Origin: Macrostomum lignano
Lineage: Eukaryota
Direction: 5' to 3'
Assembly: GCA_002269645.1 (NCBI GenBank)
Contig: NIVC01003316.1
Coordinates: 1 to 64,000, forward strand
DNA: 64,000 bases
Made by a program: the position numbers and the translations under genes. The notes beneath the pieces are model-generated. The model worked only from the letters and a program-made list of their open reading frames with translations, had not been told where the DNA came from and did not search any database. Position 1 is the stretch's first letter. Each line of letters opens with the position of its first letter. Of this stretch, positions 7,291 through 62,394 are shown one piece after another.

Positions 7291-7919
7291 AGCCAGCGTG
7301 AATCTGGCTGAGCAGCCGAGGCTCAGCTGAAAGTCCTCTTTGGGCTTAAGCAGTCCAATTGAGCAGAGAGGGCAGGTCGCTCAGCCGCTGCCCGAGCCGA
7401 GCTCATTCACTCACTTTACTCTCTCACAGCTCCCCTAGGGGAGAAGCAGTGGGCAGCAGAGAAATCCACCGCGGATATTGAGCAGGATTTTCGGGAGCAC
7501 GGGATTCCAGTTGGGGGATTTGGGTTGGGTTGGGCGAGCCTTATGGGATGGAAGGCACTGAAAGATGAGGTGCAGCAGATTCTGAGCTTGGCGCTCGACT
7601 AACTCCATCGCAAGTTCGGAGCAGCAGCAGCAGTTCTGGCTCAGCTTCCTCTCAGGAAAAAAGGGCTCAAAGTGTGAGCACGCAGGGCTCGCTCTCTTCG
7701 GAATCACTCTGCCGTGAAGGCTGCGGATTTTCGCACGCGAGAGGAGATTTTTTCGCATCGAAAAGTTTTTGGGCCATTTTTTGGGAGAAAGATTTTGGAG
7801 CTCTCATCTTGAATGACCTTGCTGGCATTATGGGAATGGGCGTTTCGGAGCAATAGAGATTTCAATCTAGTGACAGTGCTAGTATGGCAGTGCCACGGGT
7901 AGATGGAGGGGAGTGATAG

Positions 7920-8488
7920 GAGTGACAGAGTAGCGGAGTGACAGAGTAGCGGAGTGACAGAGTAGCGGAGTGACAGAGTAGCGGAGTGACAGAGTAGCGG
8001 AGTGACAGAGTAGCGGAGTGACAGAGTAGCGGAGTGACAGAGTAGCGGAGTGACAGAGTAGCGGAGTGACAGAGTAGCGGAGTGACAGAGTAGCGGAGTG
8101 ACAGAGTAGCGGAGTGACAGAGTAGCGGAGTGACAGAGTAGCGGAGTGACAGAGTAGCGGAGTGACAGAGTAGCGGAGTGACAGAGTAGCGGAGTGACAG
8201 AGTAGCGGAGTGACAGAGTAGCGGAGTGACAGAGTAGCGGAGTGACAGAGTAGCGGAGTGACAGAGTAGCGGAGTGACAGAGTAGCGGAGTGACAGAGTA
8301 GCGGAGTGACAGAGTAGCGGAGTGACAGAGTAGCGGAGTGACAGAGTAGCGGAGTGACAGAGTAGCGGAGTGACAGAGTAGCGGAGTGACAGAGTAGCGG
8401 AGTGACAGAGTAGCGGAGTGACAGAGTAGCGGAGTGACAGAGTAGCGGAGTGACAGAGTAGCGGAGTGACAGAGTAGCGGAGTGACAG
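7920..8488. repeat. 16-bp near-perfect minisatellite (GAGTGACAGAGTAGCG)n
   Basis: About 35 essentially identical copies. Confidence 0.97.
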
Positions 8489-11133: not shown

Positions 11134-12275
11134 CTAGATCTGCTTTAACGCCCTCTAGATCTACTTTCGCGCCCTCTAGATCTACTTTCGCGCCCTCTAG
11201 ATCTACTTTCGCGCCCTCTAGATCTACTTTCGCGCCATCTAGATCTACTTTCTCACACTCTAGATCTAATTTCTCACACTCTAGATCTACTTTCTCGGAC
11301 TCTATATCTACTTTCTCACACTCTAGATCTACTTTCTCACACTCTAGATCTACTTTCTCGCACTCTAGATCTACTTTCTCACACTCTAGATCTACTTCCT
11401 CATACTCTAGATCTACTTTCTCGCACTCTAGATCTACTTCCTCACACTCTAGATCTACTTCCTCATACTCTAGATCTACTTTCTCACACTCTAGATCTAC
11501 TTCCTCGCACTCTAGATCTACTTTCTCGCACTCTAGATCTACTTTCTCACACTCTAGATCTACTTTCTCACACTCTAGATCTACTTTCTCACACTCTAGA
11601 TCTACTTTCTCGCACTCTAGATCTACTTTCGCGCACTCTAGATTGAATTTGACGCACTCTAGATCTACTTTCTCACACTCTAGATCTAATTTCTCACACT
11701 CTAGATCTACTTTCTCACACTCTAGATCTAATTTCTCACACTCTAGATCTACTTTCTCGCACTCTAGATCTACTTTCTCACACTCTAGATCTACTTCCTC
11801 GCACTCTAGATCTACTTTCTCGAACTCTAGATCTACTTCCTCACACTCTAGATCTACTTCCTCATACTCTAGATCTACTTTCTCACACTCTAGATCTACT
11901 TCCTCGCACTCTAGATCTACTTCCTCACACTCTAGATCTACTTTCTCGCACTCTAGATCTACTTTCTCACACTCTAGATCTACTTCCTCGCACTCTAGAT
12001 CTACTTTCTCGCACTCTAGATCTACTTCCTCACACTCTAGATCTACTTCCTCATACTCTAGATCTACTTTCTCACACTCTAGATCTACTTCCTCATACTC
12101 TAGATCTACTTTCTCACACTCTAGATCTACTTCCTCACACTCTAGATCTACTTTCTCACACTCGAGATCGAATTTAGCGCACTCTAGAACTAATTTAGCG
12201 CACTCTATATCTGCTTTAGCACCCTCTAGATCTACTTTCGCGCCCTCTAGGTCGAATTTGGCGCACTCTATATCT
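11134..12275. repeat. 21-bp minisatellite (TCTAGATCTACTTTCTCACAC)n
   Basis: About 54 copies; gives stop-free frames on both strands. Confidence 0.96.
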
Positions 12276-13004
12276 ATTTTCCCCAGAAATTCACCAGATC
12301 TATTTAGCATCTCTGGGAAAACTGAAAGCAAAAAAAACGATTCAAAAAAGGAATGTCATCACAGACTCTCGCACAGCAACTGGGACTGGTCTTTGTATAA
12401 GAAAAATATACCTAGCAGCATACAGATGAGTGCCCTGCACTGTTTGCTGTGGACCAGGCAGGAGAGGAGAGCAGATGAGAGGACCCGGGAGGTGCACAGT
12501 GTCGAGTCCTCGACCCCCAAGACTAACAGCAGTCGGGTCTGCTGTGTGTTCGCCTTGGCAGCAGCGCACGGTTACGTCAAAATCCCTTTCGACTCCCGAT
12601 GGACCTCTCTTGTCTGGCCCAGAAATATCCACATACACCCTCCCCATCTCTTCAAGGTTTTTTCTCTCCATCAAGTCACAGAAGGCTCTGTTTTTTGCTG
12701 TAGTAGCTATGAGAGTATGAATAGCGGTCTGGGCTGTGACTGCTGTTGGGGGGGGCTCAAGGGTATTTGCTGTGCCGCGGAGGGCCGCAGGGGTGTAGCC
12801 ACATTTATTAGCCAAGCGAGATTGAATTGGTAAACTGGGGCCGCCCCGCTGTTGGCCATTGCTGCTTCTGTATTTCCTGCCTGTGCCAACTCTCTGCTCA
12901 AGAGTTGCTTTCGTTGACTTTGAGCAAATACGAGTGTACAAATTCCTTGTATGGAGAGAAAGTAGAAAGTGTTCCAGCTGCTGCTGCCTCACTCTCTGCT
13001 TTTA

Positions 13005-16160: not shown

Positions 16161-16820
16161 TCTACCTTGGGCAGACGGAGAACAAGACACACCATGACAC
16201 CAAGATGCATAATAGGACACAAACCAAGACAGACACTATGACAGGCACTGAAACAGACACTAAGACACATGTACAGACACTAATACAGGTATAAACTAAC
16301 ACTGAGACACCAAGGCAGCAAGTTAAAAAAAGTCTATACGCTCGAAGTTGTAAATCACGCAGCGTTTAATATTCGGTAATAAAAATATGCGCATAAAAGT
16401 TTTGCATCCTTATTCCCAGCTTCACCAGCTGACTGACAGAACCGGGCCTGAGATGCAGCTCGTATTTAAGACCCGGTGACTCAGAGGCATCCCCTTCCCC
16501 CCCCCCCCCGAAGTCGGTTGCCCACTTGCTCACGCGCGAGTCAGTTTGCGAGCCATTAAACCGCTATGGCTTGGCTATAAACTATTGAAATGGGCTGCCA
16601 CTTGAGCCTGGCTCCATTGGAAACCTTGCTGTTGGAGGTCTCTAGATTGGGAAACTGTTTGCAGACAAATATATGCAGATTGGGGAGCGGCAAATTCATT
16701 TCTGAGGAATCTGTGCACTGGCTGAATTGAGCTCAAATATCCGGCCTGCCAAGCTTATCAGTGCAACTGTGCTCAGCTGCTCCCTGTAGCATACTGCCAC
16801 TTGTGGGCTGCTGGGTATTA

Positions 16821-18242
<1,422 letters not shown>

Positions 18243-29940: not shown

Positions 29941-30030
29941 CCCCCTAACCTTCCTCTCCCCATCCTCTCTCGTCTTCAATGGAATCGAATCTCTACTTAC
30001 ATCAAAGCGCACAGTCTCCAAGCTTTGCAC

Positions 30031-30465
30031 TCAATTTTCCAGATCCGGTTCGCAGCTGCTGTAAAATCTGTCGAGTTCTTGCAGCACTCTGGTGGAAGTC
30101 GGTCGCTGAGCCGAGTTCAGGGCCAGGCACGGTCTGAACACCCTGTCGCACAGGTCTAGATAGCACCTGTCGCTGATAAGCAGCCCTGCCTGCGGCGACA
30201 GCGGCTGCTGCACTGACGAGTCGCCCAGCAGGCTCAGTCGCAGCTCGGGCTCACCGCCGCCAGAGGCGCGCCGGCCGGTGAACAGCTCCAGCAGGGTGAC
30301 GCCAAGGGCGTACACGTCCACCTTGCAGGACAGGAGCTCGCCAGGTGCGCCTGGCCTGTCCGGTTCTCCCGGCACGAAGTAGCCATTGGTGAAGTAGCGG
30401 ATTCTGGGCTGCGAGGACTGCGGCCTGTCTTCCATCCGCGTGAGGCCCGAGCCTGCGGTGGCCGT
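30031..30465 (-). CDS. IRAK/Pelle-like protein, exon 2: activation segment and C-lobe of kinase domain 2, with stop codon
   Basis: Acceptor ttcctgccccatcAG. Phase-0 join to exon 1 gives DLDSLQ|TATAGSGLTRMEDR...FTNGYFVPGE...KVDVYALGVTLLELFTG...CLALNSAQRPT, then TGA at 30031-30033. Confidence 0.85.
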   Translation of the reverse strand, partial: TATAGSGLTRMEDRPQSSQPRIRYFTNGYFVPGEPDRPGAPGELLSCKVDVYALGVTLLELFTGRRASGGGEPELRLSLLGDSSVQQPLSPQAGLLISDRCYLDLCDRVFRPCLALNSAQRPTSTRVLQELDRFYSSCEPDLEN

Positions 30466-30537
30466 CTGATGGGGCAGGAATGGAGACTGTGATGAGGCTG
30501 CTTAGGGACAATTTGGAATCATTCATCCCTCCTTGTT

Positions 30538-30862
30538 GGCGTTAAACTACAGTGGTCCTTGGCGTTAAACTACAGTGGTCCATGGTGTTAAACTACAGTG
30601 GTCCTTGGCGTTAAACTACAGTGGTCCTTGGCGTTAAACTACAGTGGTCCTTGGCGTTAAACTACAGTGGTCCTTGGCGTTAAACTACAGTGGTCCTTGG
30701 CGTTAAACTACAGTGGTCCTTGGCGTTAAACTACAGTGGTCCTTGGCGTTAAACTACAGTGGTCCTTGGCGTTAAACTACAGTGGTCCTTGGCGTTAAAC
30801 TACAGTGGTCCTTGGCGTTAAACTACAGTGGTCCTTGGCGTTAAACTACAGTGGTCCTTGGC
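30538..30862. repeat. Intronic 23-bp minisatellite (GTTAAACTACAGTGGTCCTTGGC)n
   Basis: About 14 copies inside the kinase-gene intron. Confidence 0.96.
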
Positions 30863-30960
30863 GCGGGAGGAGGAAGGGAGGGAGAGTCTGAGACTGAGAA
30901 CGGAGAGCAGCCCCTACTCAAAGGACGGAGCAGCCTCAACTCAGTTGCCTGAGCAGCCGC

Positions 30961-31234
30961 GATTTCCCCAGACACACCTGCAGGCTGTCTCCGATCTCCC
31001 CAGACACACCTGCAGGCTGTCCCCGATCTCCCCAGACACACCTGCAGGCTGTCTCCGATCTCCCCAGACACACCTGCAGGCTGTCTCCGATCTCCCCAGA
31101 CACACCTGCAGGCTGTCCCCGATCTCCCCAGACGCACCTGCAGGCTGCCCCCGATCTCCCCAGACGGTCCCCGATCTCCCCAGACGCACCTGCAGGCTGT
31201 CCCCGATCTCCCCAGACGCACCTGCAGGCTGTCC
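30961..31234 (-). repeat. 32-bp minisatellite made of the exon-end/intron-start junction
   Basis: Minus-strand unit GACAGCCTGCAG|GTG(C/T)GTCTGGGGAGATCGG(G/A); 8 full copies plus one 20-bp partial. Confidence 0.95.
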
Positions 31235-33166
31235 AGGTCGCCCAGCTTGCAGTGCCAGTCAGCAGTGAGCAGCACGTTGGTGCTCTTCACATCCTGGTGC
31301 GCCAGGCTGAAGCTGCGCCAGTCGCCAGCCGCTGCGGCTTCGACCTCCTGCCGGCTGTGCAGGAAGTCCAGGGCGCTGGCCAGCTCGTGCGCCATCCGGA
31401 TTCGAACTCCGGCCAGCTGGAACTCGCAGGCTGGCGGCGCCCGGCCGGCGGCGAAGTCGTCAATCAGCTGCCGCAGGTTGCCGGCCTCGCACAGCTCGTA
31501 GACCAGCAGGAGGTCGCCGCCCGCCGCCTCGCCGCGGTGAGCGAAGCCGAGCAGCCACAGCAGCCGGGGATGGCGGAGGCCCGCCTGGCGCCGCAGCGCC
31601 TCCAGCGGGATGCCCGCAGAGTCGGGCAGCAGCTTCTTGACGGCGACCGGCCGCCCTGCCAGGTTCACCCGGTACACGCGGCCGAAGCTGCCGGCTCCGA
31701 GCTCCTCGCCGACCTGGCGGACCGCGGCATCCAGCTCGGCGAAGCTGAACTCCTGCAGCCCGGCCTCACCGTCCTCGGCCTCGGCCGCGGCCAGCAGCGT
31801 CTGCAGGCGGCCCCGCAGCACCGCGGCGGTGCACCTCTCGGCGAAGTTGTGCAGCAGGCAGGGCGCCACGGCTTCTCTGCAGACGCGGGCGTGCAGGCCT
31901 GCGGACAGCCGCAGCCCCGGCTGAGGCGGCGGAGCCCGACCGTCGGCCAGGGCCCAGCAGAGCCAGGACTCCTCCGGAGTGTCGCTGCTGGCGGGCTGGC
32001 CGCGCAGGCCGGTGAGCAGCTCCAAGATGGTGACCCCGGTGCTGAAGACGTCCCACTTGCAGGTGACTCGGTCTTCGGGCGGCCGGTAGCCCAGCGTGTG
32101 CACTCGGCCACCTGCTGGGCCCGCTGCTCACCCCAGACGGTCTGGCCGAGCCCTGCGGTGGTCAGGTCGAGGAAGTCCAGGTCGGCGAGGCGGCAGCGCC
32201 AGTCGCCGTCAACCAGGATGTTGCTGGGTTTCACATCCTTGTGCACGAAGCTGAAGCTGAGGAGGCCGGCCCGCTCGTCTCGCGCCATCGACTTCTCCTC
32301 GGTGGCGTGCAGGAACTCCACGGCCGAGGCGATGTCGGTTGCCATGCGGAGCCGCGTGCCGCCCAGGTGAAACCCGCTGGCCACCGCCTCCGCCGACGAC
32401 CACCAGCTGTGGGGCTCGGCGAACCGGTCGAGCAGCTGGCGGAGGTCGCCGTTGCTGTGGAAGTCGAACACGGAGTACATGCGGTCGTCGGCGGGCGAGT
32501 AGCCGAAGCCGACCAGCCGAGCGATGCTCGGGTGCCGCAGGCCGCTGAGGGCGCCGATCGACCTGCGGATGGCCTGGCGCGCCTCCTCGCTGATGCCCGG
32601 TCGGTAGGCCTTCACCGCGTGCTGCCGGCCTTCGACCAGCGCTGCCGTCCGGAAGACCTCGGCGAAGCCGCCCGAGCCGATCAGGGAGCCGCAGGCCACG
32701 GCGCGCCGCAGCTGCTCCGCCGGGAACTCCAGCGGCGAGTCGTCTGGTGGAGGCGGAGGCGGAGGCGGGGGCGGGGGTGGGGGCGGGGCAGGGGCAGAGG
32801 GGACGGAGGGGGCGGCTCCGCAGTCGTGGGCGGAGGCTGCCAGGCCTGGTTGAGCAGGTTGGACCGCACGAAGGCCTCGGCTTCGCGAAGTCCCCGACGG
32901 CTCAGGACCTCCAGCAGCTCTTCAAGGCTGCAGCTGCGCTCCCACAGCAGCAGGGCGGCCGCGGCTTCTCCGCCAGGACTCTGGCAGACCAGCAGGGCCT
33001 GGTCGGCTGACAGAGGCCGGCCCTCAGAGTCCAGGTAGTCTTCAACCAGAGCTCGCCAAGATTCGCCTTGCTGCAGCTTGCGGCCCAGGATGGCCCAGGT
33101 GGATGGGTAGCGAGCTCGCACCTGGTGCAGTCTGGTGCGCAGGTTCAGCGGCTGGCGGAGCGGCAT
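31222..33166 (-). CDS. IRAK/Pelle-like protein, exon 1: death domain, Pro-rich linker, kinase domain 1 and the N-terminal part of kinase domain 2; two apparent -1 frameshifts (near 32790 and 32120)
   Basis: ATG in gccgtcATGc context at 33166. Death-domain-like segment (LGRKLQQGESWRALVE...LLLWERSCSLEELLEVLSRRGLREAEAFV). Kinase 1 motifs: IGSGGFAEVF, HAVK, HKDVKPSN, LADLD, TLGYRPPE, DVFSTGV. Kinase 2 motifs: LGAGSFGRVY, VAVKK, LVYE, HQDVKSTN, LGDLD. Ends at a CAG|GTGCGT donor. Built from ORFs 32681-33205, 31665-32699 and 30841-32103. Confidence 0.8.
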
Positions 33167-36100
33167 GACGGCCTCTGCGATGCTTGCAGTTAGCTGAGAA
33201 TTCACTGCTGAGATGAAGGCTGAAATGAACTGCCTGCGCCTTCCGTCTTAGTGCTGCGCCCTGTGCGTATTGTACAGCTGGGGTAGAGTGTGCAGTGGGG
33301 TGCAGCTGGCGGTGTGCATTGACTGCCCGCCCTGCACTGCGCACAGGCTGTGCATCTGCTAAGTTTTTTCGCAAGCAGGGGTGGCTGGGCAGCTGCCTGT
33401 GAGCGCTTGGGCACTGCTTGAAGGAATGTCCATTCACACCGCCGTCGAATAAGCCATAAAGTAAAGGTCACACTTTGGATGTGCAAAGCCATCTGTATCA
33501 AAAGCGACACGACATACGAGCGTACTTTGGGCCGTGGGGGTTGAGCCTTGCTTGTGTTGAGTGCATACGAATTGTAGCAGAAGCTGAAGTAAAAATTCCC
33601 TGGAATTGGACCCCGGGGAACTTTCTGTCTGGCGCGTTTGAGACTCAGACCCGTTACGACCAAGCTACCCGACTCCCAGAAAAGAATACATACGTCAAAA
33701 TCGTTCAATCAATTACTGTCATCTTATTTATACACCTTGTAGATGATTGCTAAGTTTGGAAAATCAGTCAGTCAACAGAGTTGAATGAAGATGTTATGCT
33801 GTAGTGTCCCTCCCCCCTCCCGCCAAGGTGCTTTTTATCCAGTCTGGCCGGGTGTGAGGTGAGGTTGTAGGCGTGATACGCAGCGGTAACTAACTTCCTT
33901 TTTATTTGTCATAAGCAGTAAGTTTGAGCCAGTAATTTTCTGAAGCTTTATTTGAAGCAGCGACAATGCAGTGGGTACATGTTTGCATTGTGTATTTCGC
34001 GACGGGTCACGGGAAGACGTGTCAGGTGCCGCCGTCTCCTCCGCTCCTCAAACAACTTCAAGGCACAACTTATAGAGAACCCAGAGTTTGTGTTGTGATA
34101 CAAAACATTACTTGCGCCGCATTAGAGAGCCTTGGAGACTACAACGGGACAGCGATTGCGTCACAAGGAAGTCTGCAGCGGCGAAGTTTAGCTCCCTAAG
34201 GGAGGTGGGCGGTCGGCGGTCCTGCGGTCGATCCGCGTTGACAAAATGTGCGATCCAATTTTTACTTTCCGCTCCAGCCTCTCCACCTCTCTTAAGCCTC
34301 TTCCGCTCCGGACTGCAAAACTAATTTAATCATCGACATCAGAACCGGCGTCTATTGCTATGCTGACTTGCTGATGCTCTCAGAACCTCAGATCTTAATG
34401 TAGTGTCCCACAGATCCTAATTTTAAAACATTCTTCAGATCTTTCCATTTCAATCGCAACCTTCACTTTTACTCGTAAAACGGTACTCTTGATCGGATCC
34501 AGAAACAAACGTAGCACCAACAATTTTATTCAATGTTTCCTATATGTACGCGCTCGTACATGTACATGTACATATACAAATTAACGCAGCAGATTTGTAA
34601 GGACTCATACTATAGATTTTCTACCGAATTATTACAAGTACGCTCGAATAAATACCCCCCAAAAATTCATAAGTTTAAGTTTTTTCTAGACGGCGTTCAA
34701 AATTTTGATAAAAATACGTAATTGACATGCCCAGTCTACCATATGCATGCACGATAAAAGCGAGCCCAAATGTATTTGTCAGATCGAGTCAAAGTCTGAC
34801 ATTTGAATTCTGAGTCAAATTTGAGTCCAGATCAGCCTGACTCGACTTGGTTGAAAGGTATAGATAGAGTTGCAGTTTTAAACGAAGAAATCAACATCCT
34901 GCCGAAAAAGTTTTTCATTATGGGATTGAATTAAGCTTAAATTAAGTTGTCTTGATAATTGACTCGATCCAGATCTAGCCCTTCGTTGCGTTCTGCCTCC
35001 CTTTGATTTACCCTCTGACAAGGCCAGACTTTACGGAACCCCGGTAAGGGGTTTAAAAACGTATTTACATCACTTTATCTTTTGATAGTAATTTTGACGC
35101 CGGCCTAATTTAATTGTCTTACACGTATATCTACGTTCCTTCTGGCAAAAGGCTTTCTAATGCGAGCGATTTCGCCAAAAAATTATGGGTTTTCTGAAAA
35201 AAATCATGCCTAAATGATCTTTGCTTGGCATTATTGATGCTCTAAAATGATTGGTAAGCACAGCACATAAAATTATGCCTAAAATATTGTCAGATAGGCA
35301 AATCTAGAAAAACGTTTAGCTATATAAACAAAGCACATTGTGAGGCATATTTTTTTTTGCCCTTTTAGTAATAGTATGCTTTTAAAATTTAAACTTAATA
35401 TCATAAAAGTTATTGCTTTCTGATTTTTTAACAAAAAAGAATTTTTTTAAAGCAACTTTATTTTTTTATTTCTTTAAATTGCTCATTCACACGAACGATA
35501 TACCACGCTCGCCGTTGAACATCAACAGTGTAATAATATTTTAAAAAATTATTTGCCGCTTTTAATTGTTTAATTGTTAGTAAATTTTAACTGTAAGCAG
35601 TTTTGTATACTAGCCTAAATTTCTTTAGTTTTATTCCAATTTTAACTATCATTTCATGTTGATTTATTTTTTAAAAGTTAAGGTTTTAGTCTAAACCTCT
35701 CGTCTTCAATAAAAGTTAATCTCAACTTGAGGTTCGAGTTTTACATTTACATGAGTTGTAAATTTTGTTCTGAATTTAAATTTTAACTGAAATGAGAAAT
35801 TCCAAGTCAACAGATTTCCTGAACTGTTGCCAAAAGGAAACTAACTTTTCAAAATCTATTGAAACTTTTTTATGTTGTTATGTAGCTTAGGCCTAGCCTT
35901 ACTGCTAAAGCTATGTTTGCACAGTTTCCTAATCAGTACCTATTGTTTTTGTCTATGGGAGTGTTTTTGTACATCAGCAGTTTTAGTGACAGCTTTTTTG
36001 TGACATCCAAGTCATTTTAATGATAAGAAAAAAGGGTAATCCTTCTAATATCCCCTATCCATGAATTCCAAAAAGGCATAATTTTTTTCAACAAAAATAA

Positions 36101-48959: not shown

Positions 48960-51516
48960 ATGTCTGACGCAGACCTAGCGCAGCAGCAGCAGACTGCTGT
49001 TGCAGAAGAACAACAGCAACAACAAGAACAAGTTGCTGCTATTTCGAACGAACAGGTTCAACAGGAGGCTGCTTGCGGCAGCTTCCAGGAGCAGCAACCG
49101 GAGGACGCCGAGGTTGCGAATGCCGAGCACGCTGTTGCGGTGGACGAGGCGAAAGCAGCAGACAGCCAGCTGGAGCCAGGCGCCGGTAATGCAGCAGACG
49201 AGTTTGGGGCTGACGCTCGACCAATGCAGGGCCTGGACTCGATTCTGGCTAACACGGACGCCATCGATGTTGATCAGTACCAGCCCCAGCCCACCCAGGG
49301 CTGGCAGCACCAGCATCCGCTGTCAGCCGCTGCATCGGCTACTTCGCCAACTGCCAGGCAGCCGGCAAAGTACATCTGCCGGGAGTGCGGCCGCGGCTAC
49401 GCTAACAAGTCCTCGTTGAGAACGCACGCCAGAGGTGCACACGCCGATCTGCTGGGCCAAGGAGGCGGCGGCGCGGCAGGATCAGCCAGGCTGTTCAACT
49501 GTCCCCACTGCGACTTTGCCAGCCCGTTCCGGGGCAACCTGGACCGGCACGTGCTGTCGCAGCACACGGCCGGCAGGGAGCGAAGCTTCGGCTGCCAGCA
49601 GTGCGGCCAGATGTTCTACACGGCTAGCCAGATGCGGGAGCACTGCCGCTCTGTGCACTCGGACAGCAGCCACCGATGCGAGCAGTGCGGCAAGCAGTTC
49701 AACACTAAACTGCGGCTCCGTCAGCACATGGACACGCACAATCCCACTAAGCCGCACGTGTGCGACATGCCCGGCTGCGAGCGGGCCTTTCGCACGGCCA
49801 AATACTTGAAGAATCACAAAGACGAATTTCACAAGCTGCAGCCGCACCAATACAACTGTCCGATAGCCAATTGCGGCGCCGTATTCTATAAGAAGACGCA
49901 CATGAAGCGGCACATGGAGGTGCACGGCGGGGCCAAGAGTTTCCGCTGTCTATGGCCGGACTGCGAGCGGGCCTTCAGGACTCACGGGGCCCTGCAGATT
50001 CACAGGTACAAGCACACTGGGGAGAAGCCGCTAGGCTGCGGCTTGTGCGAGTACAGGTGCCGGCAGAAGATCTGCCTGTTCAATCACCACAGACGAGCTC
50101 ATCCGGACACCGCTCTGCCTGCTCAGCTGGCTAATCTGGCGCAGAGACGCCGCCGGCCGCGGCTGGCCCAGCCGAATGCCGCCAACGACGCTGTTGGTGG
50201 TGCCGCCATTGGAGACTCTGCGGCAGCAGCGGCGGCTGCCGCATCATCCGACGACGACGATGATGAAGACGTCGAAGAAGACGGCGACGACGAGGAGAAC
50301 AATGGAGGCCAGGCGCAGCAGCAGCCTGGTGGGCATCGGCAGCGGCCGCTTGACGCTTCGCTAGCCGCTTCGTCGGCTGGTGGAGCCGCCGCTGAGCACG
50401 ACGCCGACTGTCTGTACGGATTCAGCGACTTTGAGAACAGCGACGGCAATATTGGAGGCGGCGTTGGCAGCGTCGGCGCCTTCCTCACGCAGGCCGACTG
50501 CTCCTCTGGCGGCGGCGGTCCCGGCGGCTCGGCTGGTCCGAAGCTCGACTCCCAGATTGACGGTATCATTAGCAATCTTGAGCAGGACTCGAATCTTATC
50601 GACTTTCTTGAGGAGCGCGTCCAGCATCCTCATCAGCAGCCCATGAGCCAGGCGCCGCATCATCAGCCGGCGCAGAAGCTGGGTTATTCGATCAACGATT
50701 TGGTTTTCCCCGGCAACAGCAGTCAGCGGGCGGCGCCGGCGCACCTGGGCGGGTTTGGCATTCGCTCGCCCGACAATCTGCCGATCGGCGGCGCGCCCAG
50801 CGCCGACTCCTCGGCGAGTCCCAACGGCAACGCGCCCAGCGGCCACAGCACCGGCAGCAACAGCAACGGCCACCACGGCTGCCCAGCCGGCAGCAGCAAA
50901 GACTTCCTCGACGAGGTGTTGGAAGACATTCAGAGCATTCAGGAGAAGGAGCGGGGCGGCGCCGCTGCTGCCGCTACTGCCGGGTCCTTCAGCTTCGACC
51001 GACCGTCGCCTTTTATTGGCGCCAGGCCGGCGCCGCCGTTGGCCGACGCGTCCGCTTGGAGCGACTCGTCCGGCTATTCGAGCGGCCACGACACCGCCCT
51101 GCCGCCCAAGGAGCCCGCGCCTGCCGCCGCCGCCGCTGCAGCTGCCGCCGCCGCCGCTGCCGCAGCCGCCGCAGCCGCTTCAAGGCCGCTGGGTCCTATC
51201 CCGCCTGGCCTGTTTCCGCCCTACTATCCTGCCACAGGGCCTTACCCTGGCAGCCTGTTTCAGCAGCCTCACCAGCTGCCTCATCACCAGCAGCCGGCTG
51301 GTCAGCCGTATCGCCAGCTGCATATGGGCGATCATCTGCGCTCTCTGAGCGCGCTGGGCAACAAGTACCTGCCGGACACACCGCAGCAGCCTTACTCTGC
51401 TGGCCAGCAGCAGCCGCCGCCGCCGCCACAAGCGCAGCAACCGTGGGATGTGCCCTACAGTGGAGGCCCGCCTGCTGGCCCCTACGACTACTTGAGAAGT
51501 CATCTCAGCAGCGATG
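48960..51516 (+). CDS. C2H2 zinc-finger protein (8 fingers, ZFP91/ZNF276/ZNF692-like C-terminal array) with acidic, poly-Ala and Gln/Pro-rich regions; main coding exon
   Basis: Eight CxxC...HxxxH fingers, from CRECGRGYANKSSLRTH to HTGEKPLGCGLCEYRCRQKICLFNHH. Upstream branch-like ACTAAT and acceptor AG at 48947-48948. The ORF runs into a GATG|GTGAGT donor at 51517. Confidence 0.92.
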
Positions 51517-51540
51517 GTGAGTGAGCTGCTTGGTTTCCAT

Positions 51541-52250
51541 AAACCCGAATGCAGAATCGCCCTGTAAACCCCAATGCAGAATCGCCCTGCAAACCCCAAT
51601 GCAGAATCGCCCTGCAAACCCCAATGCAGAATCGCCCTGTAAACCCCAATGCAGAATCCCCTGTAAACCCCAATGCAGAATCGCCCTGTAAACCCCAATT
51701 CAGAATCGCCCTGTAAACCCCAATTCAGAATCCCCCTGTAAACCCCAATGCAGAATCGCCCTGTAAACCCCAATGCAGAATCCCCTGTAAACCCCAATGC
51801 AGAATCCCCCTGTAAACCCCAATGCAGAATCGCCCTGTGAACCCCAATGCAGAATCCCCCTGTGAACCCCAATGCAGAATCCCCTGTAAACCCCAATGCA
51901 GAATCCCCCTGTAAACCCCAATGCAGAATCCCCCTGTAAACCCCAATGCAGAATCCCCCTGTAAACCCCAATGCAGAATCCCCCTGTAAACCCCAATGCA
52001 GAATCGCCCTGTGAACCCCAATGCAGAATCCCCCTGTGAACCCCAATGCAGAATCCCCTGTAAACCCCAATGCAGAATCCCCTGTAAACCCCAATGCAGA
52101 ATCCCCTGTAAACCCGAATGCAGAATCCCCTGTAAACCCCAATGCAGAATCCCCCTGTGAACCCCAATGCAGAATCCCCTGTAAACCCGAATGCAGAATC
52201 CCCTGTAAACCCGAATGCAGAATCCCCCTGTAAACCCCAATGCAGAGTCG
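51541..52250. repeat. Intronic 24-25 bp minisatellite (AACCCCAATGCAGAATCGCCCTGTA)n
   Basis: Starts about 25 bp after the zinc-finger gene donor. Confidence 0.95.
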
Positions 52251-54671
52251 CCCAGCACCGCTATGCTTACTAGCTGTGGCAGAATCTGCCTCTTGAAGCA
52301 GATGGCTCCTATACCCTGTAGGCTGGCCGGCCACGCCGCCTTTACCCACGTGCCTCAGCATTCCCTGCACTGCATCTCTTGCTCTGGCTCGTTCTATTCT
52401 CAGCCTGTGATGTTTTCCCTATTCGGCTGCGCTGCCCGACCTTGAAAAGCAGCCTCTCCTCCGCCTCATCCTCACTCCGCCCACGCGCTCTCAGTTGCGC
52501 AGACTTTGGAGGGAAGCCACCCTCGGACTGGACTGTCCTCATTTCCCCTTTTCTCACCCCCTTCTTGGCTGTCCAGTCCACGGTCTGTAGCTGATACCCT
52601 GGACAGAGCGGCGTCCCTTCCACTTCCCCTACCCCAGTGTTCAAGCCAAAGAGGAATCGAATTCAAATTTTTTTGTTCATTTTCGAGAGAAACAAAAATA
52701 TTGCTCTGTCTTTTATTATTATGGGATTTTTATTGTAGTATAATTGTGGCAGTAAAATTATATATATTATATACATTAATTGTTAATTCGGTCAGTGCAT
52801 ATGCATGCATAGATATTTAGTGTAGGTGTGAGAGTGGGTGCCTGTGCCTGACCCTGGCCTGGCCTGGCACAGATTAGTGAGGAGCTGAGCGTGCTACGAG
52901 TGAGTGAGTGAGTGAGAGGGAGAGAGACAGAGAGAGGAGGCAAGAGTGCCGCTTCAGGGTTCCGCGCACTCGCCCTCTCACCGCCACCGCCCCCTCTGTC
53001 CCTCCGTCACACCCTCCGCGAGTGCCGAGCGTGTCCCCGCTGTAATAGACTGAGGCTTTAAACCCCAGACCGGCGCGCAGCGTACGCAGGGGCATTGGTG
53101 GGGCGGGGTGTTGGAATTCGCAGTGTAAAAAGCTCCGAGGGGCTTAAGGTAAAGGGAGGAAGGCGGAGCCGCTCCCCCGGCAGAGACGGAACAGCTTTAG
53201 CGCGTACACTTTCCCACCCCCTCTCAGCTGCTGAACACACTGTAGCCATAGGGAGAGGGGTAGGATGGAAGCACCGAAGTCCCGTTCCGTTCTGTTCCCC
53301 CAGTTTCTGGCGCGGCCGGACTTCAAAATTGCGCCCCTCAAGCCTCCCACCGATCCCATCAGTTCCCCTTCCTCCCCTTCTATCCCGTTTTTTTGCCGGC
53401 CGTGTGCGTTGACTCATTTTTGTGCCGCGGCCGCCGCTTTTCTCTCTCGGAGCTTGGTAGAATGGACAACCAAGCCTTACCAGCAGCAGCAGCTTAGAGG
53501 AGCCCGAGGGTGTCGCCTCTTCCCTATCCCCCCCTGTCTATCGATATACCGTAAGACCAGTTTTTCCAAGGTCTTCTTTTCTCTTTCAGCGTTCTCTTAG
53601 ACTCGGAGGACTCTCGGTCGAGTCTGAGTCAAGAGACAATGAATTTTGCAGCCCGGCCTGCGCCTCTTGCTGTGACCTTAAAAAAAGACTCGCCGCCCTC
53701 GTGTGACTTGGGAAAGTGGGGGGGGGGATGCCTCCTGCCTGCGTTTCGAGCGCGCAGGCACTCCTGAGGCCTTTCTCTTTCCCTGCCTTTGATTCTCTTG
53801 CGCAAACTTTGTCACCTTGGGGACCCGAGACAGTCGGTGCGCTTTTTGTGCGCATTGTACCCTCCTCTCTGCCCCTCCGTACTCTCTATCTACCTACCGC
53901 TTTTGTGACTCCAGTCTTCTCTCAGGCCCGCTAGCTAGAAATGCTTGTTGTATAAAGCAGGGGTCAGAAATTCTTTTACCTCAGCGGCGAGATAAAAAAT
54001 TTTGCTCCTGGCTTGATGAGAGAGAAAAGGTGAGGGAATAGATGACAGTGAAGAAGGCAGAGATGTGGGAGAAGAGGGAAGAAAAGATGTGCGACTGTAG
54101 TAGGCGAGAAAGGAGATGAGATTAGAGATGAAATAAAAAAGAGGAGAGAAGAGGGGAGAGGGAGAGAGAAGTGGGGAGAGAGGAGAGAAGAGAGCTGAGA
54201 ATAGACAAATATTGATCGGTCCGGGTTGCTATTTTGAATTTTCAAAGGATAGAGAGGCTTCGCAGGACTGAGTTTGCCGGATAATAATATCAGATGATTC
54301 AGTATTATATCAGATAATAATTCAGTATAAAGTAATATAAGTATATTATTATGCCGTACTAAAAATAGTTCGCCGCAAATTTTAGGTGCGCGTGAAAAAT
54401 CGATATTTTATGCGGAAGCCAAACACCCCCCCATTTTTTGGATTAAAATTAAATTAATATCCAAACTACACTACTGCTGGGACTCCATTCAGTAGGCATA
54501 GTTGGCGCATAGATGCTAAAAAAATATTTGACTGTCGGAGCGGCAGTTCCTCCGGTAATCTGTTTTTTTTCGCAAGAGAAGCAACCCAATCCTTCTTTAC
54601 GAGGCCGAGTCTGATTAAGAATGATTTTCGATGCTCATTTCCGGTCCAAAATTCCTGTTGCTAACCCACAG

Positions 54672-54940: not shown

Positions 54941-55621
54941 GCTGCCTGCTGCCTGCAGAATTTCTTGTACACAACAGCAGCATTAGCAGTTGAGCTAACC
55001 TGTCTGCCTGTTAATTGATTGACACAAGCACACACCTGTCCATTCCAATGCACTGCTCTCGCGGCTACCCCATTCTGTATAAAAAAAACTTCTTCTAAAC
55101 ACATCAGTTTGTAGTTGTTTTTTTCTTTGTAGCTCCCCCCCCCCCCCCCCGCCTAGTAATTACTTGACTATGGATGCAATGCCTATTAATACTATGTCAC
55201 AGTCTGTGATCTTGACAGATTAATCCCCTAATCCCGCTTATTAAACAGTTCAAGTCTGCCTTCTACAATCAGTCGCTTTACTGTTTTTCCTTGTCTAATC
55301 ATGTCATATTAATTAATCGATATTTTCTATTTCTCTTATCAAAATAATAACTATATTGAAACAGAATCTCAGGGGGCCAGTGTACAGGATCGCGGCAATT
55401 TCTTATTGATCCTAGCAAATTTATTATCTTGCTCTGTACAAGCGCATGCCCTACTGTTGCTACTCTGTCTAGTAAAGTGAGTAGTATTCGAGGCAATTTT
55501 TTCCTGTGAATTTTTTGTTTTGTTTAAATAGGTCTGATAAGATTTTACGCATTGTAGGGCGTTTAATTAGTATCCAGCCATGTTCTGTAATGCCTTCCAT
55601 TATCCTCTTATAATATTGCCA

Positions 55622-56732
55622 TCTGACCCCATATGAGAGTCTCCCTCTGACCCCATCTGGGAGTCGCCCTCTGACCCCATCTGAGAGTCGCCCTCTGACC
55701 CCATCTGAGAGTCGCCCTCTGACCCCATCTGAGAGTCGCCCTCTGACCCCATAAGAGAATCGCCCTTTGACCCCATATGAGAGTCGCCCTCTGACCCCAT
55801 ATGAGAGTCGCCCTCTGACCCCATCTGAGAGTCGCCCTCTGACCCCATATGAGAGTCTCCCTCTGACCCCATCTGAGAGTCGCCCTCTGACCCCATATGA
55901 GAGTCTCCCTCTGACCCCATATGAGAGTCGCCCTCTGACTCCATAAGAGAATCGCCCTCTGACCCCATCTGAGAGTCGCCCTCTGACCCCATATGAGAGT
56001 CTCCCTCTGACCCCATCTGAGAGTCGCCCTCTGACCCCATATGAGAGTCTCCCTCTGACCCCATATGAGAGTCGCCCTCTGACTCCATAAGAGAATCGCC
56101 CTCTGACCCCATCTGAGAGTCGCCCTCTGATCCCATAAGAGAATCGCCCTCTGACCCCATCTGAGAGTCGCCCTCTGACCCCATAAGAGAATCGCCCTCT
56201 GATCCCATCTGAGAGTCTCCCTCTGACCCCATATGAGAGTCGCCCTCTGACCCCATAAGAGAATCGCCCTCTGACCCCATATGAGAGTCTCCCTCTGACC
56301 CCATCTGAGAGTCGCCCTCTGACCCCATCTGAGAGTCGCCCTCTGACTGAGAGTCGCCCTCTGATCCCATCTGAGAGTCGCCCTCTGACCCCATGAGAGA
56401 ATCGCCCTCTGACCCCATCTGAGAGTCGCCCTCTGACCCCATGAGAGAATCGCCCTCTGACCCCATCTGAGAGTCGCCTTCTGACCCCATCTGAGAGTCG
56501 CCTTCTGACCCCATCTGAGAGTCGCCCTCTGACCCCATGAGAGAATCGCCCTCTGACCCCATATGAGAGTCTCCCTCTGACCTCATATGAGAGTCTCCCT
56601 CTGACCCCATGAGAGAATCGCCCTCTGACCCCATGAGAGTCGCCCTCTGACCCCATCTGAGGGTCGCCCTCTGACCCCATGAGAGTAGCCCTCTGACCCC
56701 ATCTGAGAGTCGCCCTCTGACCCCATGAGAGT
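55622..56732. repeat. 24-bp minisatellite (CTCTGACCCCATCTGAGAGTCGCC)n
   Basis: About 46 copies. Confidence 0.96.
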
Positions 56733-57260
56733 CAGCCCTTAATCCCTAGAAAGTGGCCTCTGACCCCCATTGAGTTTGGTCAATCACCGGCATTATAATT
56801 TCACAAAAAGTGTACCTACTCATTTTAGTACTACATATTGCCTTTTGCGAATAAATTTGTCAGAAAAAATGTTTCGACTTTTTACCAACGCTCTGCTCAG
56901 CTACTGAATTTGCATAGCAACTAACTTCAGAGTTTTGACAGTAGGTCTATTCTAGGTCTGCTTGCAGCGCCTAGTTGTCCTGCAGAAGACAATTTGTCTG
57001 CGTTGTGGCTTTTATGATTTTTTATAAATTCTTCCAAAATGTTTAAATAATAACACCAACTGACAATGCTCATAGCTGCACAGGACTGGGAGTGAAAGAC
57101 TGGCACATGGCTGACTTTTTTATCTTTTTTTTACTACTGCTGCTGATACTACTGTTAATAAGTATAATATACTACTGCTATGCATTGCTCATTTTAGTGT
57201 ATTTATAATCTTGTGTGCATGTGCTCCATCCGAAGCCCGGCACTCACCAGTTTTCTATAG

Positions 57261-61509: not shown

Positions 61510-62394
61510 TGCTGAGACAGGCACCCAGGCAGTTGGACAGGCAGTAAGACAGATACAAAGACATTTAGGCAGGCAGGCAGACTCAGGAGTGCTGCTCTCC
61601 GTTATCCAAGCAGAAGCGAAACTGACTCAACTGTAAAATGCCCCCCGAGAGACCGCCAATGAAAGGCGCATACAGCATCTGAATGCAATGCGGAGATCCC
61701 TAACGCATTAATAATTCAACAATGCAATGGTTTAGAGAGACAGAAGACGCAGGCTTACATGCCCTACGGTGGTCAGCTTGTGCCGGATTCAGCTTCTGCC
61801 AGAGAGAGCAGAGACTGCTGCTGTAGGCTCTGATGGAACCAGTAGAGATCAGGCTGGCTGATGCTGAGGGCAGGGCAGAAGGCCCGCCCCACAGCGCACG
61901 TCAGATGGCGCTGTCAGTCAGTCAGCGGCCTAAAACTGGTAGCTGGTAGCAGCCAAAGTGCCGCTAATTTCGCGCCATTTAGCAATGTGTTTTGTTTATA
62001 GCTGCGACTCTGCGATGTCCGGCTTGATTGATGTCCGCCCCAATGCTATCAGTTGCTGCGCATCGAGAGACACAGAAAGACAGGCAGGCGCAAGACGGAG
62101 TACAGGAAGATGCCAAAACAGAGAGTCATAGCCCCATTTTCTGCTTTCAGAACAAAAAAGCTGCTTGCTTCTGTCACTTCCATTGCTTCTCTAAAAGCAG
62201 AAAAAAATTCCAAATTTTGTCGCCCGGCCCATGTCCTGCCCCTATTCTCTCTGCTCTACCTGCTTCTTCCAGTCGAAATCTCCCATCTCTTCAATCCCCT
62301 ATTTCCCCCACTCTCCCCGGGCTTGCGCGCTCCGTGCATCAGGTTCAATTTTACTATATTGGCTCTCTTAAACTGCCCGAATCTCCCCCGTTGT

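What the first reader, a model, noticed from the sequence alone, without database searches (positions are those of the whole stretch)
30031..33166. Death domain fused to two tandem IRAK/Pelle-like kinase domains
Seen in the sequence: one reading unit encodes DD - poly-Pro linker - kinase 1 - short acidic linker (AAAEAEDGEAGLQEFSFAELD) - kinase 2. Established: IRAK1-4, Pelle and Tube have one death domain and at most one kinase domain, and signal as paired kinases in the myddosome. Tandem kinase proteins (Rpg1, WTK1/Yr15) are known immune receptors in plants. Inference: this could be an animal tandem-kinase immune protein that hard-wires an IRAK4/IRAK2-like pair, or a kinase plus a decoy, into one chain. 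I know of no described animal family with this architecture.
Basis: partly seen in the sequence, partly recalled or inferred. Interest (0 to 1): 0.85.

Follow-up and report, generated by a model that had tools for sequence, protein, structure and literature searches.

The report
Flatworm IRAK-like protein with two kinases
This is a gene of the flatworm Macrostomum lignano that encodes two IRAK/Pelle-type kinase domains fused in one chain behind a small helical domain that is probably a very divergent death domain, an arrangement I could not find described in animals, although this particular copy carries two one-base frame breaks.

Summary
The window is Macrostomum lignano assembly Mlig_3_7, contig NIVC01003316.1. 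The gene lies on the minus strand, 33166 to 30031.

**Confirmed**
- There are two protein-kinase domains. The C-lobe of K1, the acidic linker and the N-lobe of K2 sit in one uninterrupted exon.
- The homeologous copy (98% identical) and two independent annotations show the same fusion.
- Both domains are closest to RLK/Pelle/IRAK kinases.
- K1 and K2 are 35% identical to each other and about 25-30% identical to anything else, so they arose by an internal duplication.

**Partly confirmed**
- The N-terminal domain gets no Pfam Death hit and no homologue in 1.8 billion proteins.
- It is coding, all-helical and aligns colinearly with death domains (p about 0.001-0.002 in targeted tests).
- IRAK death domains rank first in two structure searches, but neither hit is significant.

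**Caveats**
- The frame between the N-terminal domain and K1 is off by one base in both copies.
- This copy lacks one further base inside K1.
- pN/pS between the copies is 0.13, which argues for a working gene, with assembly errors or very recent damage.

The "IRAK4/IRAK2 pair" and "decoy" readings are not supported. Both domains keep the catalytic Lys/Asp/Asp residues and share the same odd motifs.

Verdict: a new variant of a known kind, of moderate interest.

The parts
32837..33166 (-). N-terminal domain of about 110 aa (MPLRQ...NQAWQ). It is all-helical and probably a divergent death-fold domain. Read in its own frame, the ORF runs on to a stop at 32683-32681.
   Evidence: - ATG and frame.
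- Coding periodicity in its own frame, GC1/2/3 = 0.75/0.50/0.78, the same phase pattern as the kinase exons.
- 2 synonymous and 0 non-synonymous differences from the homeologue.
- No Pfam, PDB or HMMER hits.
- AF2 models of low confidence with 7 helices.
- Foldseek rank 1 is the IRAK-M DD in one search and the IRAK4 DD in the other, at E = 2.5-5.
- Death-domain profile tests give p about 0.001-0.002.
32745..32836 (-). Pro-rich linker (poly-C DNA). It contains the one-base frame offset between the N-terminal ORF and K1.
   Evidence: - Three-frame translation.
- The same offset is present in homeologue L001, which differs here by an in-frame 6-nt indel and 3 substitutions.
- The GC phase switches inside 32926-32747.
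- No convincing GT-AG intron restores the frame.
31774..32744 (-). Kinase domain 1 (K1). Its motifs are GSGGFAEV, AVK, HKD...N, DLD and YRPPE, with a Phe gatekeeper.
   Evidence: - Pfam Pkinase.
- PDB best hit CERK1, 9.4e-16.
- Motif alignment.
- tblastn coordinates.
32106..32107 (-). Site of a one-base deletion private to this copy. It breaks the K1 frame after ...QQVA.
   Evidence: Pairwise alignment with L001 shows the window has a gap where L001 has A. L001 reads through, and P0001 and P0022 carry QQVARVHTLGY.
31729..31791 (-). Acidic inter-kinase linker AAAEAEDGEAGLQEFSFAELD, which includes the RLK/IRAK-type juxtakinase motif of K2.
   Evidence: It lies inside the single ORF 30841..32103. 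It aligns to EFSYEEL of CERK1 and to the plant and IRAK4 motifs.
31222..31773 (-). Kinase domain 2 (K2), first exon part. Its motifs are GAGSFGRV, AVKK, a Tyr gatekeeper (LVYEL), HQD...N and DLD.
30466..31221 (-). Phase-0 GT-AG intron of 756 nt. It carries a 32-nt minisatellite (31234-30960) and a 23-nt minisatellite (30863-30536).
   Evidence: - Sequence.
- Repeats.
- The splice junction DLDSLQ|TATAGSG is confirmed by the annotated proteins P0001, P0020 and P0022.
30031..30465 (-). K2 second exon (activation segment to C-lobe, ...AQRPTSTRVLQEL...) and the stop codon at 30033-30031.
   Evidence: Identical to the annotated P0020.

Best explanation
**What it is.** This is homeologue g2 of the Macrostomum lignano gene Mlig022961. 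It encodes a soluble signalling protein of the IRAK/Pelle (RLK/Pelle) kinase family, with no signal peptide or membrane segment.

**Architecture.** A divergent death-fold N-terminal domain is followed by a Pro-rich linker like the ProST region of IRAK1, then K1, a short acidic linker and K2. The two kinase domains arose by internal duplication of one lineage-specific kinase.

**Shared kinase features.**
- Both are non-RD (HKD and HQD).
- Both have DLD in place of DFG.
- Both have the same insertions before the catalytic loop.
- Both keep the beta3 Lys, the catalytic Asp and Asn, and the metal-binding Asp.

**Mechanism (inferred, not shown).**
- The N-terminal domain joins a death-domain oligomer, as in the myddosome or the Tube-Pelle complex.
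- Clustering brings the tandem kinases together for trans-phosphorylation.
- K2 is the more canonical domain (GxGxxG, Tyr gatekeeper, RP in subdomain XI) and is the likelier catalytic output.
- K1 (GxGxxA, Phe gatekeeper, RC) is the likelier regulatory or scaffold partner.

**Frame breaks.** The two one-base breaks in the window are most likely deletions left by the PacBio assembly. At worst they are very recent damage to one of three homeologous copies.
For: **Identity of the locus**
- The window is 100% identical to NIVC01003316.1 of GCA_002269645.1.
- The homeologue on NIVC01000016.1 is 97.9% identical and has homologous flanks.
- That divergence fits the 1.9-2.4% reported between M. lignano subgenomes (PMC10733133).

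**Tandem kinases**
- Pfam finds two Pkinase stretches.
- There is one exon across the K1-K2 junction.
- L001 has one uninterrupted ORF from the poly-Pro tract to the K2 intron.
- The annotated proteins P0001 (NCBI) and P0022 (UniRef, from another assembly) span both domains.
- The NCBI models come from a genome-guided RNA-seq transcriptome (PMC5730564).

**Kinase family**
- PDB ranking places both domains with RLK/Pelle/IRAK kinases.
- Motifs agree.

**Internal duplication**
- K1 against K2 gives 35% identity, E = 1e-46.
- The best non-self relatives are about 25-30% identical.

**Functional constraint**
- There are 8 synonymous and 3 non-synonymous differences between the copies, pN/pS = 0.13, binomial p = 0.0017.

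**N-terminal domain is coding**
- It shows GC phase periodicity in its own frame.
- K1 has no in-frame ATG before its Gly loop. The first is MYSVFDF. A complete K1 therefore needs the upstream ATG.

**Death-fold evidence**
- A death-domain HMM gives 6.8 bits, E(Z=1) = 4e-4, reached by 9 of 5000 shuffles.
- Eight of the nine profile sequences were checked against the PDB.
- Colinear alignment places the helix-2 Trp, the helix-4 LLxW, helix-5 CSLEELLEVL and an IRAK1/2-like AWQPP boundary.
- The global HH score has z = 5.6. It is reached by 1 of 1000 shuffles and by 1 of 600 natural sequence windows.
- Foldseek puts an IRAK death domain at rank 1 for two models.

**Frame breaks as assembly errors**
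- Both breaks are single missing bases.
- The assembly is Canu PacBio polished with Pilon, in a genome with near-identical triplicated loci.
Against: - The Pfam Death model gives nothing even at E <= 10. The N-terminal domain has no detectable homologue anywhere.
- The AF2 models are of low confidence (pLDDT 55-59), and no Foldseek hit is significant (E >= 2.5).
- The frame offset between the N-terminal ORF and K1 is present in both copies. That is less expected for random assembly error.
- No annotated protein contains the N-terminal domain.
- No transcript sequence could be inspected here.
- In the alignment the alphaC Glu is replaced in both domains (Ser in K1, Gln in K2), and DFG is DLD. 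Catalytic activity is therefore uncertain for both.
- No orthologue outside M. lignano was found. Flatworms are reported to lack TLRs and IRAKs (PMC4484250), so a partner pathway is not established.
Confidence: 0.6

Rival explanations
1. The window copy (g2) is a decaying homeologue, a young pseudogene left by the recent genome multiplication. Only the copy on NIVC01000016.1, or a third copy, still makes protein.
For: - There are two frame breaks in the window.
- GenBank annotates only a 202-aa ORF here, P0020.
- The private deletion at 32106 is not in a homopolymer.
Against: - pN/pS = 0.13 between the copies.
- Apart from the two one-base gaps there are no stop codons, and the splice sites are intact.
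- Both defects are single-base deletions, which I take (my own knowledge, not from the paper) to be the usual error type of a PacBio consensus. Per the assembly is Canu PacBio polished with Pilon, and polishing is hard in triplicated loci.
Confidence: 0.3
2. The N-terminal ORF is not part of the kinase protein. It would be an upstream ORF or a separate small cistron of a trans-spliced transcription unit, and the real product would be a tandem kinase without any death domain.
For: - The frame offset is conserved in both copies.
- No annotated protein includes the domain.
- About 7% of M. lignano transcription units are polycistronic (PMC5730564).
Against: - The N-terminal ORF overlaps the K1 Gly-loop coding sequence by about 60 nt in another frame.
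- K1 has no in-frame ATG before MYSVFDF, so K1 would lose its Gly loop and beta3 Lys, although that stretch is kept open and conserved.
- The poly-Pro tract reads as Pro in both frames around the junction.
- The DD-like domain, Pro-rich linker and IRAK-type kinase come in the canonical IRAK order.
Confidence: 0.13
3. The N-terminal domain belongs to the protein but is a lineage-specific helical domain unrelated to the death fold.
For: - No Pfam, phmmer or PDB sequence hits.
- No significant Foldseek hits, TM about 0.26-0.3.
- A 15-residue insertion is needed for the colinear alignment.
Against: - The targeted death-domain profile tests give p about 0.001-0.002 against shuffles and against natural sequences.
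- IRAK-family death domains come first in both structure searches out of 350,542 chains.
- Established knowledge of the IRAK/Pelle family: the death domain sits N-terminal to the kinase.
Confidence: 0.22
4. The gene is foreign: contamination, or a horizontal transfer from a plant or a GC-rich bacterium. Its best database relatives are plant receptor-like kinases and actinobacterial kinases, and its G+C content is 64% in a 35-50% background.
For: The hit lists hold only plants and bacteria beyond M. lignano itself. The composition profile shows the G+C contrast.
Against: - It has a spliceosomal intron filled with the same kind of minisatellites as the rest of the window.
- Two homeologous copies with homologous flanks lie on large flatworm scaffolds.
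- The neighbouring C2H2 zinc-finger gene has the same high G+C content and GC3.
- Identity to plant kinases is only 25-30%.
- The word-indexed search favours GC-rich, Ala/Arg/Leu-rich proteins.
Confidence: 0.03

Closest known systems
IRAK/Pelle kinases (IRAK1-4, Drosophila Pelle)
   Same: - The domain order is a small helical N-terminal domain, a Pro-rich linker, then a kinase of the RLK/Pelle/IRAK branch.
- The juxtakinase F-S-F-x-E-L motif is present.
- K2 has the Tyr gatekeeper.
- The catalytic loop is non-RD, as in IRAK1 (my knowledge of IRAK1).
- The domain boundary AWQPP resembles IRAK1 AWHPP and IRAK2 NWKPA.
   Different: - There are two kinase domains instead of one.
- The N-terminal domain is too divergent for the Pfam Death model.
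- DFG is DLD in both domains.
- Among solved structures, plant RLKs score 10-20 bits above IRAK4.
- No link to a Toll/MyD88 pathway is shown, and flatworms are reported to lack one (PMC4484250).
Plant tandem kinase proteins (Rpg1, WTK1/Yr15 and relatives; here P0024 of Clitoria ternatea)
   Same: - Two RLK/Pelle-type kinase domains lie head to tail in a soluble protein.
- Each is preceded by the FxxxEL juxtakinase motif.
- P0024 aligns colinearly over both domains.
   Different: - Identity is only 25%.
- K1 and K2 are closer to each other (35%) than to either plant domain, so the tandem arose independently.
- Plant TKPs have no death-fold domain.
- Many plant TKPs pair a kinase with a pseudokinase, whereas here both domains keep Lys/Asp/Asp.
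- The host is an animal.
Other animal proteins with two kinase-like domains (JAKs, RSK/MSK, GCN2)
   Same: Two kinase folds in one chain, where one can regulate the other (established knowledge).
   Different: They belong to different kinase families. Their two domains are not recent duplicates of each other, and none has a death domain.
Other animal kinases with a death domain (RIPK1, DAPK1)
   Same: A death domain and a kinase domain in one protein (established knowledge).
   Different: In those proteins the death domain is C-terminal and there is a single kinase domain of another family. Neither appears among the 60 best solved relatives listed for K1 or K2.

Membership tests
RLK/Pelle/IRAK kinase family | The kinase domain is most similar to members of this family | tested here: met
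   - K1: CERK1 9.4e-16, then FLS2, SymRK and BRI1; IRAK4 at 1.2e-9 is the best animal kinase.
- K2: CERK1 4.4e-14, then LysM-RK and FLS2; B-Raf at 1.3e-10 and IRAK4 at 1.7e-9.
- The best database relatives are plant RLKs and RLCKs.
- Margins are modest (10-20 bits) and no phylogeny was built.
RLK/Pelle/IRAK kinase family | Juxtakinase F-(S/T)-(F/Y)-x-E-L motif just before the Gly loop | tested here: met
   K2 EFSFAEL and K1 EFPAEQL align with CERK1 EFSYEEL and with the IRAK4 and plant motifs.
RLK/Pelle/IRAK kinase family | Tyr gatekeeper (a hallmark of IRAKs among human kinases; my knowledge) | tested here: inconclusive
   K2 has Tyr (LVYEL). K1 has Phe (SVFDF).
Animal IRAK/Pelle proteins | N-terminal death domain | tested here: inconclusive
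   - Against: Pfam Death gives no hit at E <= 10. phmmer finds nothing.
- For: my own death-domain profile gives 6.8 bits, reached by 9 of 5000 shuffles. The global HH score has z = 5.6, reached by 1 of 1000 shuffles and 1 of 600 natural windows.
- For, but not significant: Foldseek rank 1 is the IRAK-M DD and the IRAK4 DD, at E = 2.5-5.
Animal IRAK/Pelle proteins | A single kinase or pseudokinase domain | tested here: not met
   There are two kinase domains in one exon.
Animal IRAK/Pelle proteins | Acts downstream of Toll/IL-1 receptors through MyD88 or Tube death-domain assemblies | not testable with these tools
   No host proteome or expression data were available. The literature reports no TLR or IRAK in the flatworms examined (PMC4484250).
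Death domain superfamily (Pfam PF00531) | Reaches the curated HMM threshold | tested here: not met
   No families were reported for three constructs at E <= 10.
Death domain superfamily (Pfam PF00531) | Six-helix bundle of about 80-100 residues | tested here: inconclusive
   AF2 single-sequence models have pLDDT 55 and 59. They are all-helical with 7 helices, two of them short. TM to death domains is 0.26-0.33.
Plant tandem kinase proteins | Two RLK/Pelle-type kinase domains in tandem, with no ectodomain or membrane segment | tested here: met
   No hydrophobic segment is visible in the conceptual protein.
Plant tandem kinase proteins | Common descent with the plant tandem arrangement | tested here: not met
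   K1 against K2 gives 35% identity. Against the plant tandem kinase P0024 the identity is 25-27%. The duplication is therefore internal to the flatworm lineage.
Plant tandem kinase proteins | One domain is a pseudokinase or decoy (common but not universal) | tested here: not met
   Both domains keep the beta3 Lys, the HxD Asp, the Asn and the DFG Asp. Both also share the atypical DLD motif and the replaced alphaC Glu.
Processed or unitary pseudogene | Frame disruptions together with relaxed constraint | tested here: inconclusive
   There are two one-base frame breaks. However, pN/pS = 0.13, the intron is retained, and the flanks are homologous between the copies.

The most novel reading that the evidence does not exclude
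Macrostomum carries a working, lineage-specific innate-signalling protein in which a death domain recruits two covalently linked non-RD IRAK-type kinases. This would be an animal counterpart of plant tandem-kinase immune proteins that arose independently, in a phylum reported to have lost TLRs and canonical IRAKs.
Probability: 0.25. Interest if true: 0.75.

Novelty: new variant of a known kind. Interest (0 to 1): 0.5.

Why it matters
- **Gap in flatworm immunity.** IRAK/Pelle kinases are the core of Toll/IL-1 signalling. They are described with one kinase domain, working in pairs through death-domain assemblies. Flatworms are reported to lack them (PMC4484250).
- **What a confirmed protein would show.** A basal flatworm keeps, or has re-invented, an IRAK-type module. 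The kinase-kinase tandem known from plant immunity can also arise in animals.
- **Experimental access.** Transgenesis and RNAi work in M. lignano, so the pairing of two IRAK-type kinases in cis could be tested.
- **Annotation problem.** Two short annotated ORFs (202 and 564 aa) hide a protein of about 787 aa, because of single-base frame problems in a triplicated genome.

Tried and rejected
- **Word-indexed homologue search with the N-terminal domain.** No hit.
- **Exhaustive HMMER search of 1.84 billion representatives with the N-terminal domain.** No hit.
- **PDB phmmer with the N-terminal domain.** No hit.
- **Pfam on three N-terminal constructs at E <= 10.** Nothing.
- **Two AF2 single-sequence models.** Both are of low confidence, and the Foldseek hits are not significant.
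- **A GT-AG or GC-AG intron that would restore the N-terminal-to-K1 frame.** With GC donors allowed, 83 formal combinations exist in the window. None has a convincing donor and acceptor pair, and those with a GT donor would remove part of the helical domain. Rejected as unsupported.
- **A 20-nt 'intron' (gtgagc...cag) at the K1 break.** Rejected, because the homeologue reads straight through with one extra base.
- **Exact look-up of the 161-aa N-terminal ORF product in public assemblies.** Not on record.
- **Search for the gene identifier in the literature.** Nothing.
- **More copies or related genes in the window.** None.
- **Horizontal transfer or contamination.** Rejected on the intron, the homeologous flanks and the composition of the neighbouring gene.
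- **Limitation.** The two whole-protein searches returned only plant and bacterial kinases beyond the gene's own cluster. They score only the 8000 candidates that share the most words, so the absence of animal relatives is not established.


Full report
**Where the window comes from**

A search with the conceptual protein returned one close cluster, 'hypothetical protein BOX15_Mlig022961g1 [Macrostomum lignano]' (P0001, 564 aa). The contig look-ups gave two loci of assembly GCA_002269645.1 (Mlig_3_7). L002 (NIVC01003316.1, 104 kb) is 100% identical to window 29950-33400, so the window is that contig. GenBank annotates only a 202-aa ORF there (P0020, Mlig022961g2).

L001 (NIVC01000016.1, 923 kb) is a second copy. 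It is 97.9% identical in the gene and 95-96% identical in the flanks. M. lignano has three homeologous subgenomes that differ by about 1.9-2.4% (PMC10733133), so these are homeologues. A third variant exists among the UniRef entries (P0021).

**Anatomy (minus strand)**

| Feature | Coordinates | Notes |
|---|---|---|
| Start codon | 33166 | ATG |
| N-terminal domain | 33166-32837 | about 110 aa |
| Pro-rich tract | 32836-32745 | poly-C DNA |
| K1 | 32744-31774 | |
| Acidic linker AAAEAEDGEAGLQEFSFAELD | 31791-31729 | |
| K2, first part | 31773-31222 | |
| Intron | 31221-30466 | phase-0 GT-AG, 756 nt |
| K2, second part | 30465-30034 | |
| Stop codon | 30033-30031 | |

These coordinates rest. 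The splice junction DLDSLQ|TATAGSG is the one used in P0001, P0020 and P0022. According to Wudarski et al., the NCBI gene models derive from a genome-guided RNA-seq transcriptome made with StringTie, TACO and TBONE (PMC5730564).

**The tandem kinase is real**

- Pfam finds two Pkinase stretches.
- In the window itself the K1 C-lobe, the linker and the K2 N-lobe are one ORF (30841..32103).
- In L001 the frame is open from the poly-Pro tract to the K2 intron.
- P0022, from an independent assembly and annotation, also spans both domains.
- Misassembly and 'two separate mRNAs' are therefore unlikely.

**Which kinases**

- Against all PDB sequences, both domains hit plant RLK/Pelle kinases first.
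  - CERK1 scores 9.4e-16 for K1 and 4.4e-14 for K2, followed by FLS2, SymRK, LysM-RKs and BRI1.
  - IRAK4 scores about 1e-9. It is the best animal hit for K1. For K2 it is level with B-Raf.
- The juxtakinase motif (EFSFAEL, EFPAEQL) aligns with that of CERK1, plant RLCKs and IRAK4.
- Subdomain IX reads DV(F/Y)xxGVTxLEL(L/F)TG. K2 has the Tyr gatekeeper and K1 has Phe.
- Both domains keep the beta3 Lys, the catalytic Asp and Asn, and the DFG Asp.
- Both are non-RD (HKD, HQD), read DLD for DFG, and in this alignment have no alphaC Glu (Ser in K1, Gln in K2).
- Both carry the same two insertions, one after helix D and one before the catalytic loop.
- K1 and K2 are 35% identical (E = 1e-46). That is much closer than either is to any other protein found, at 25-30%. 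The pair arose by internal duplication of one lineage-specific kinase, not by fusion of an IRAK4-like and an IRAK1/2-like gene.
- The best non-self hit for K1-linker-K2 is a plant tandem kinase (P0024). It aligns colinearly at 25% identity. This is an architectural parallel, not shared descent.

**The frame breaks**

1. At 32106 the window lacks one base that L001 has. L001, P0001 and P0022 read QQVARVHTLGYRPPE.
2. The N-terminal ORF and K1 are one base out of register. The switch lies in the poly-C tract. It is present in both copies, which differ there by an in-frame 6-nt indel.

No credible intron repairs the second break.

Both defects amount to one missing base. The assembly is Canu PacBio polished with Pilon. 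I take single-base deletions to be the usual PacBio consensus error, which is my own knowledge and not stated in the paper. Polishing is also unreliable where three near-identical copies exist.

Between the copies there are 8 synonymous and 3 non-synonymous differences (pN/pS = 0.13, p = 0.0017). The sequence has therefore been under purifying selection since the copies split.

K1 has no in-frame ATG before MYSVFDF, which lies behind its Gly loop and beta3 Lys. An intact K1 therefore needs the upstream ATG.

The N-terminal ORF shows the same codon-phase G+C pattern as the kinase exons (0.75/0.50/0.78), and both of its differences are synonymous.

I conclude that the N-terminal domain is coding and most likely continuous with K1. 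This was not shown directly.

**Is the N-terminal domain a death domain?**

Negative results:
- Pfam at E <= 10.
- phmmer against PDB sequences.
- The word-indexed search.
- HMMER against 1.84 billion representatives.

Positive but weak results:
- Two single-sequence AF2 models are all-helical with pLDDT 55 and 59.
- Foldseek against 350,542 PDB chains has no significant hit. It ranks the IRAK-M death domain first for one model and the IRAK4 death domain first for the other. Pelle, p75NTR and p84 death domains and several pyrin domains follow in the short lists.

I then built a profile of nine death domains written from memory. A PDB search confirmed eight of them over their full length at about 2.1 bits per residue. 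IRAK1 has no solved death domain.
- The HMM scores the domain at 6.8 bits, E = 4e-4 for one comparison. That score is reached by 9 of 5000 shuffles.
- MAFFT aligns the domain colinearly with all nine sequences.
  - W24 matches the helix-2 Trp (W..L(A/G)..L).
  - VEDYL matches IEDRY and IEKYV.
  - LLLW75 matches the helix-4 Trp.
  - CSLEELLEVL matches helix 5.
  - AWQPP matches the IRAK1 AWHPP and IRAK2 NWKPA boundary.
  - A 15-residue insertion falls between helices 3 and 4.
- The global HH score is 16.15 over 91 columns, z = 5.6. It is reached by 1 of 1000 shuffles and by 1 of 600 natural 113-residue windows.

Taken with the position of the domain in front of an IRAK-type kinase, I put the death-fold reading at about 0.7-0.8. 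It is not proven.

**Function**

Nothing here tests function. The most likely mechanism, by analogy with the myddosome and Tube-Pelle (established knowledge), is this:
- The N-terminal domain is recruited into a death-domain oligomer.
- Clustering of the tandem kinases leads to trans-phosphorylation.
- K2 is the more canonical domain and K1 the more altered one.

Cluxton et al. state that helminths lack TLRs, the IRAK family and TRAF6 (PMC4484250). The upstream partners in Macrostomum are therefore unknown. No paper in the held library describes an animal death-domain protein with two IRAK-type kinases.

**Verdict**

- The tandem RLK/Pelle/IRAK-type kinase is confirmed.
- The death domain is plausible but weakly supported.
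- The single-chain reading depends on one unverified base in both copies and a second one in this copy.
- The specific mechanistic ideas (an IRAK4/IRAK2 pair, or a decoy) are not supported.
- It is a new variant of a known kind, of moderate interest.

Noticed in passing
window 31228-30966 (minus strand): The last 7 bases of the K2 exon plus the 5' splice site (CCTGCAG|GTGYGTCTGGGG) are repeated 8 times, as part of a 32-nt minisatellite that starts at the exon-intron boundary. The used donor is therefore followed by seven look-alike donors, mostly 32 nt apart. Since 32 is not a multiple of three, using one of them would shift the frame.
   Followed up: partly
window 30863-30536, against L001 about 11690-11760: A 23-nt minisatellite (TTGGCGTTAAACTACAGTGGTCC) inside the K2 intron has 14 copies here. 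The homeologue has only about 3, a 253-bp length difference.
   Followed up: partly
window 29946-29150: A 35-copy, 23-nt minisatellite begins about 85 bp after the stop codon of the kinase gene. It creates a spurious 290-aa 'GERSEGEGERGQ...' ORF.
   Followed up: no
whole window, e.g. 1-927, 7919-8488, 11134-12281, 16820-18242, 55618-56767, 62394-63440: At least 25 unrelated micro- and minisatellite arrays with periods of 4-34 nt, each 0.3-1.4 kb long, fill the intergenic DNA. Most ORFs over 150 aa in the window are translations of these repeats, and their Pfam 'hits' are low-complexity artefacts.
   Followed up: partly
window 48960-51524 (+): A single 854-aa ORF encodes a C2H2 zinc-finger protein (zf-C2H2 3.3e-19). 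It has the same high G+C content and GC3 (0.73) as the kinase gene and is followed by a 25-nt minisatellite at 51540-52253.
   Followed up: partly
window 31252-32370 (+) and 32241-33038 (+): Long antisense ORFs of 372 and 265 aa lie across the kinase gene. They are what 64% G+C would produce by chance and have no family hits, so I treat them as artefacts.
   Followed up: no
GenBank PAA52016.1 (P0020, this locus) and PAA94098.1 (P0001, locus L001): The public annotation truncates the gene to 202 aa here and to 564 aa in the homeologue. ORF calling started at the first ATG downstream of the single-base frame breaks.
   Followed up: yes
P0024 (Clitoria ternatea, 746 aa): The best non-flatworm match to K1-linker-K2 is a plant protein with two kinase domains. 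It aligns colinearly across both domains, including the inter-kinase juxtakinase motif.
   Followed up: partly
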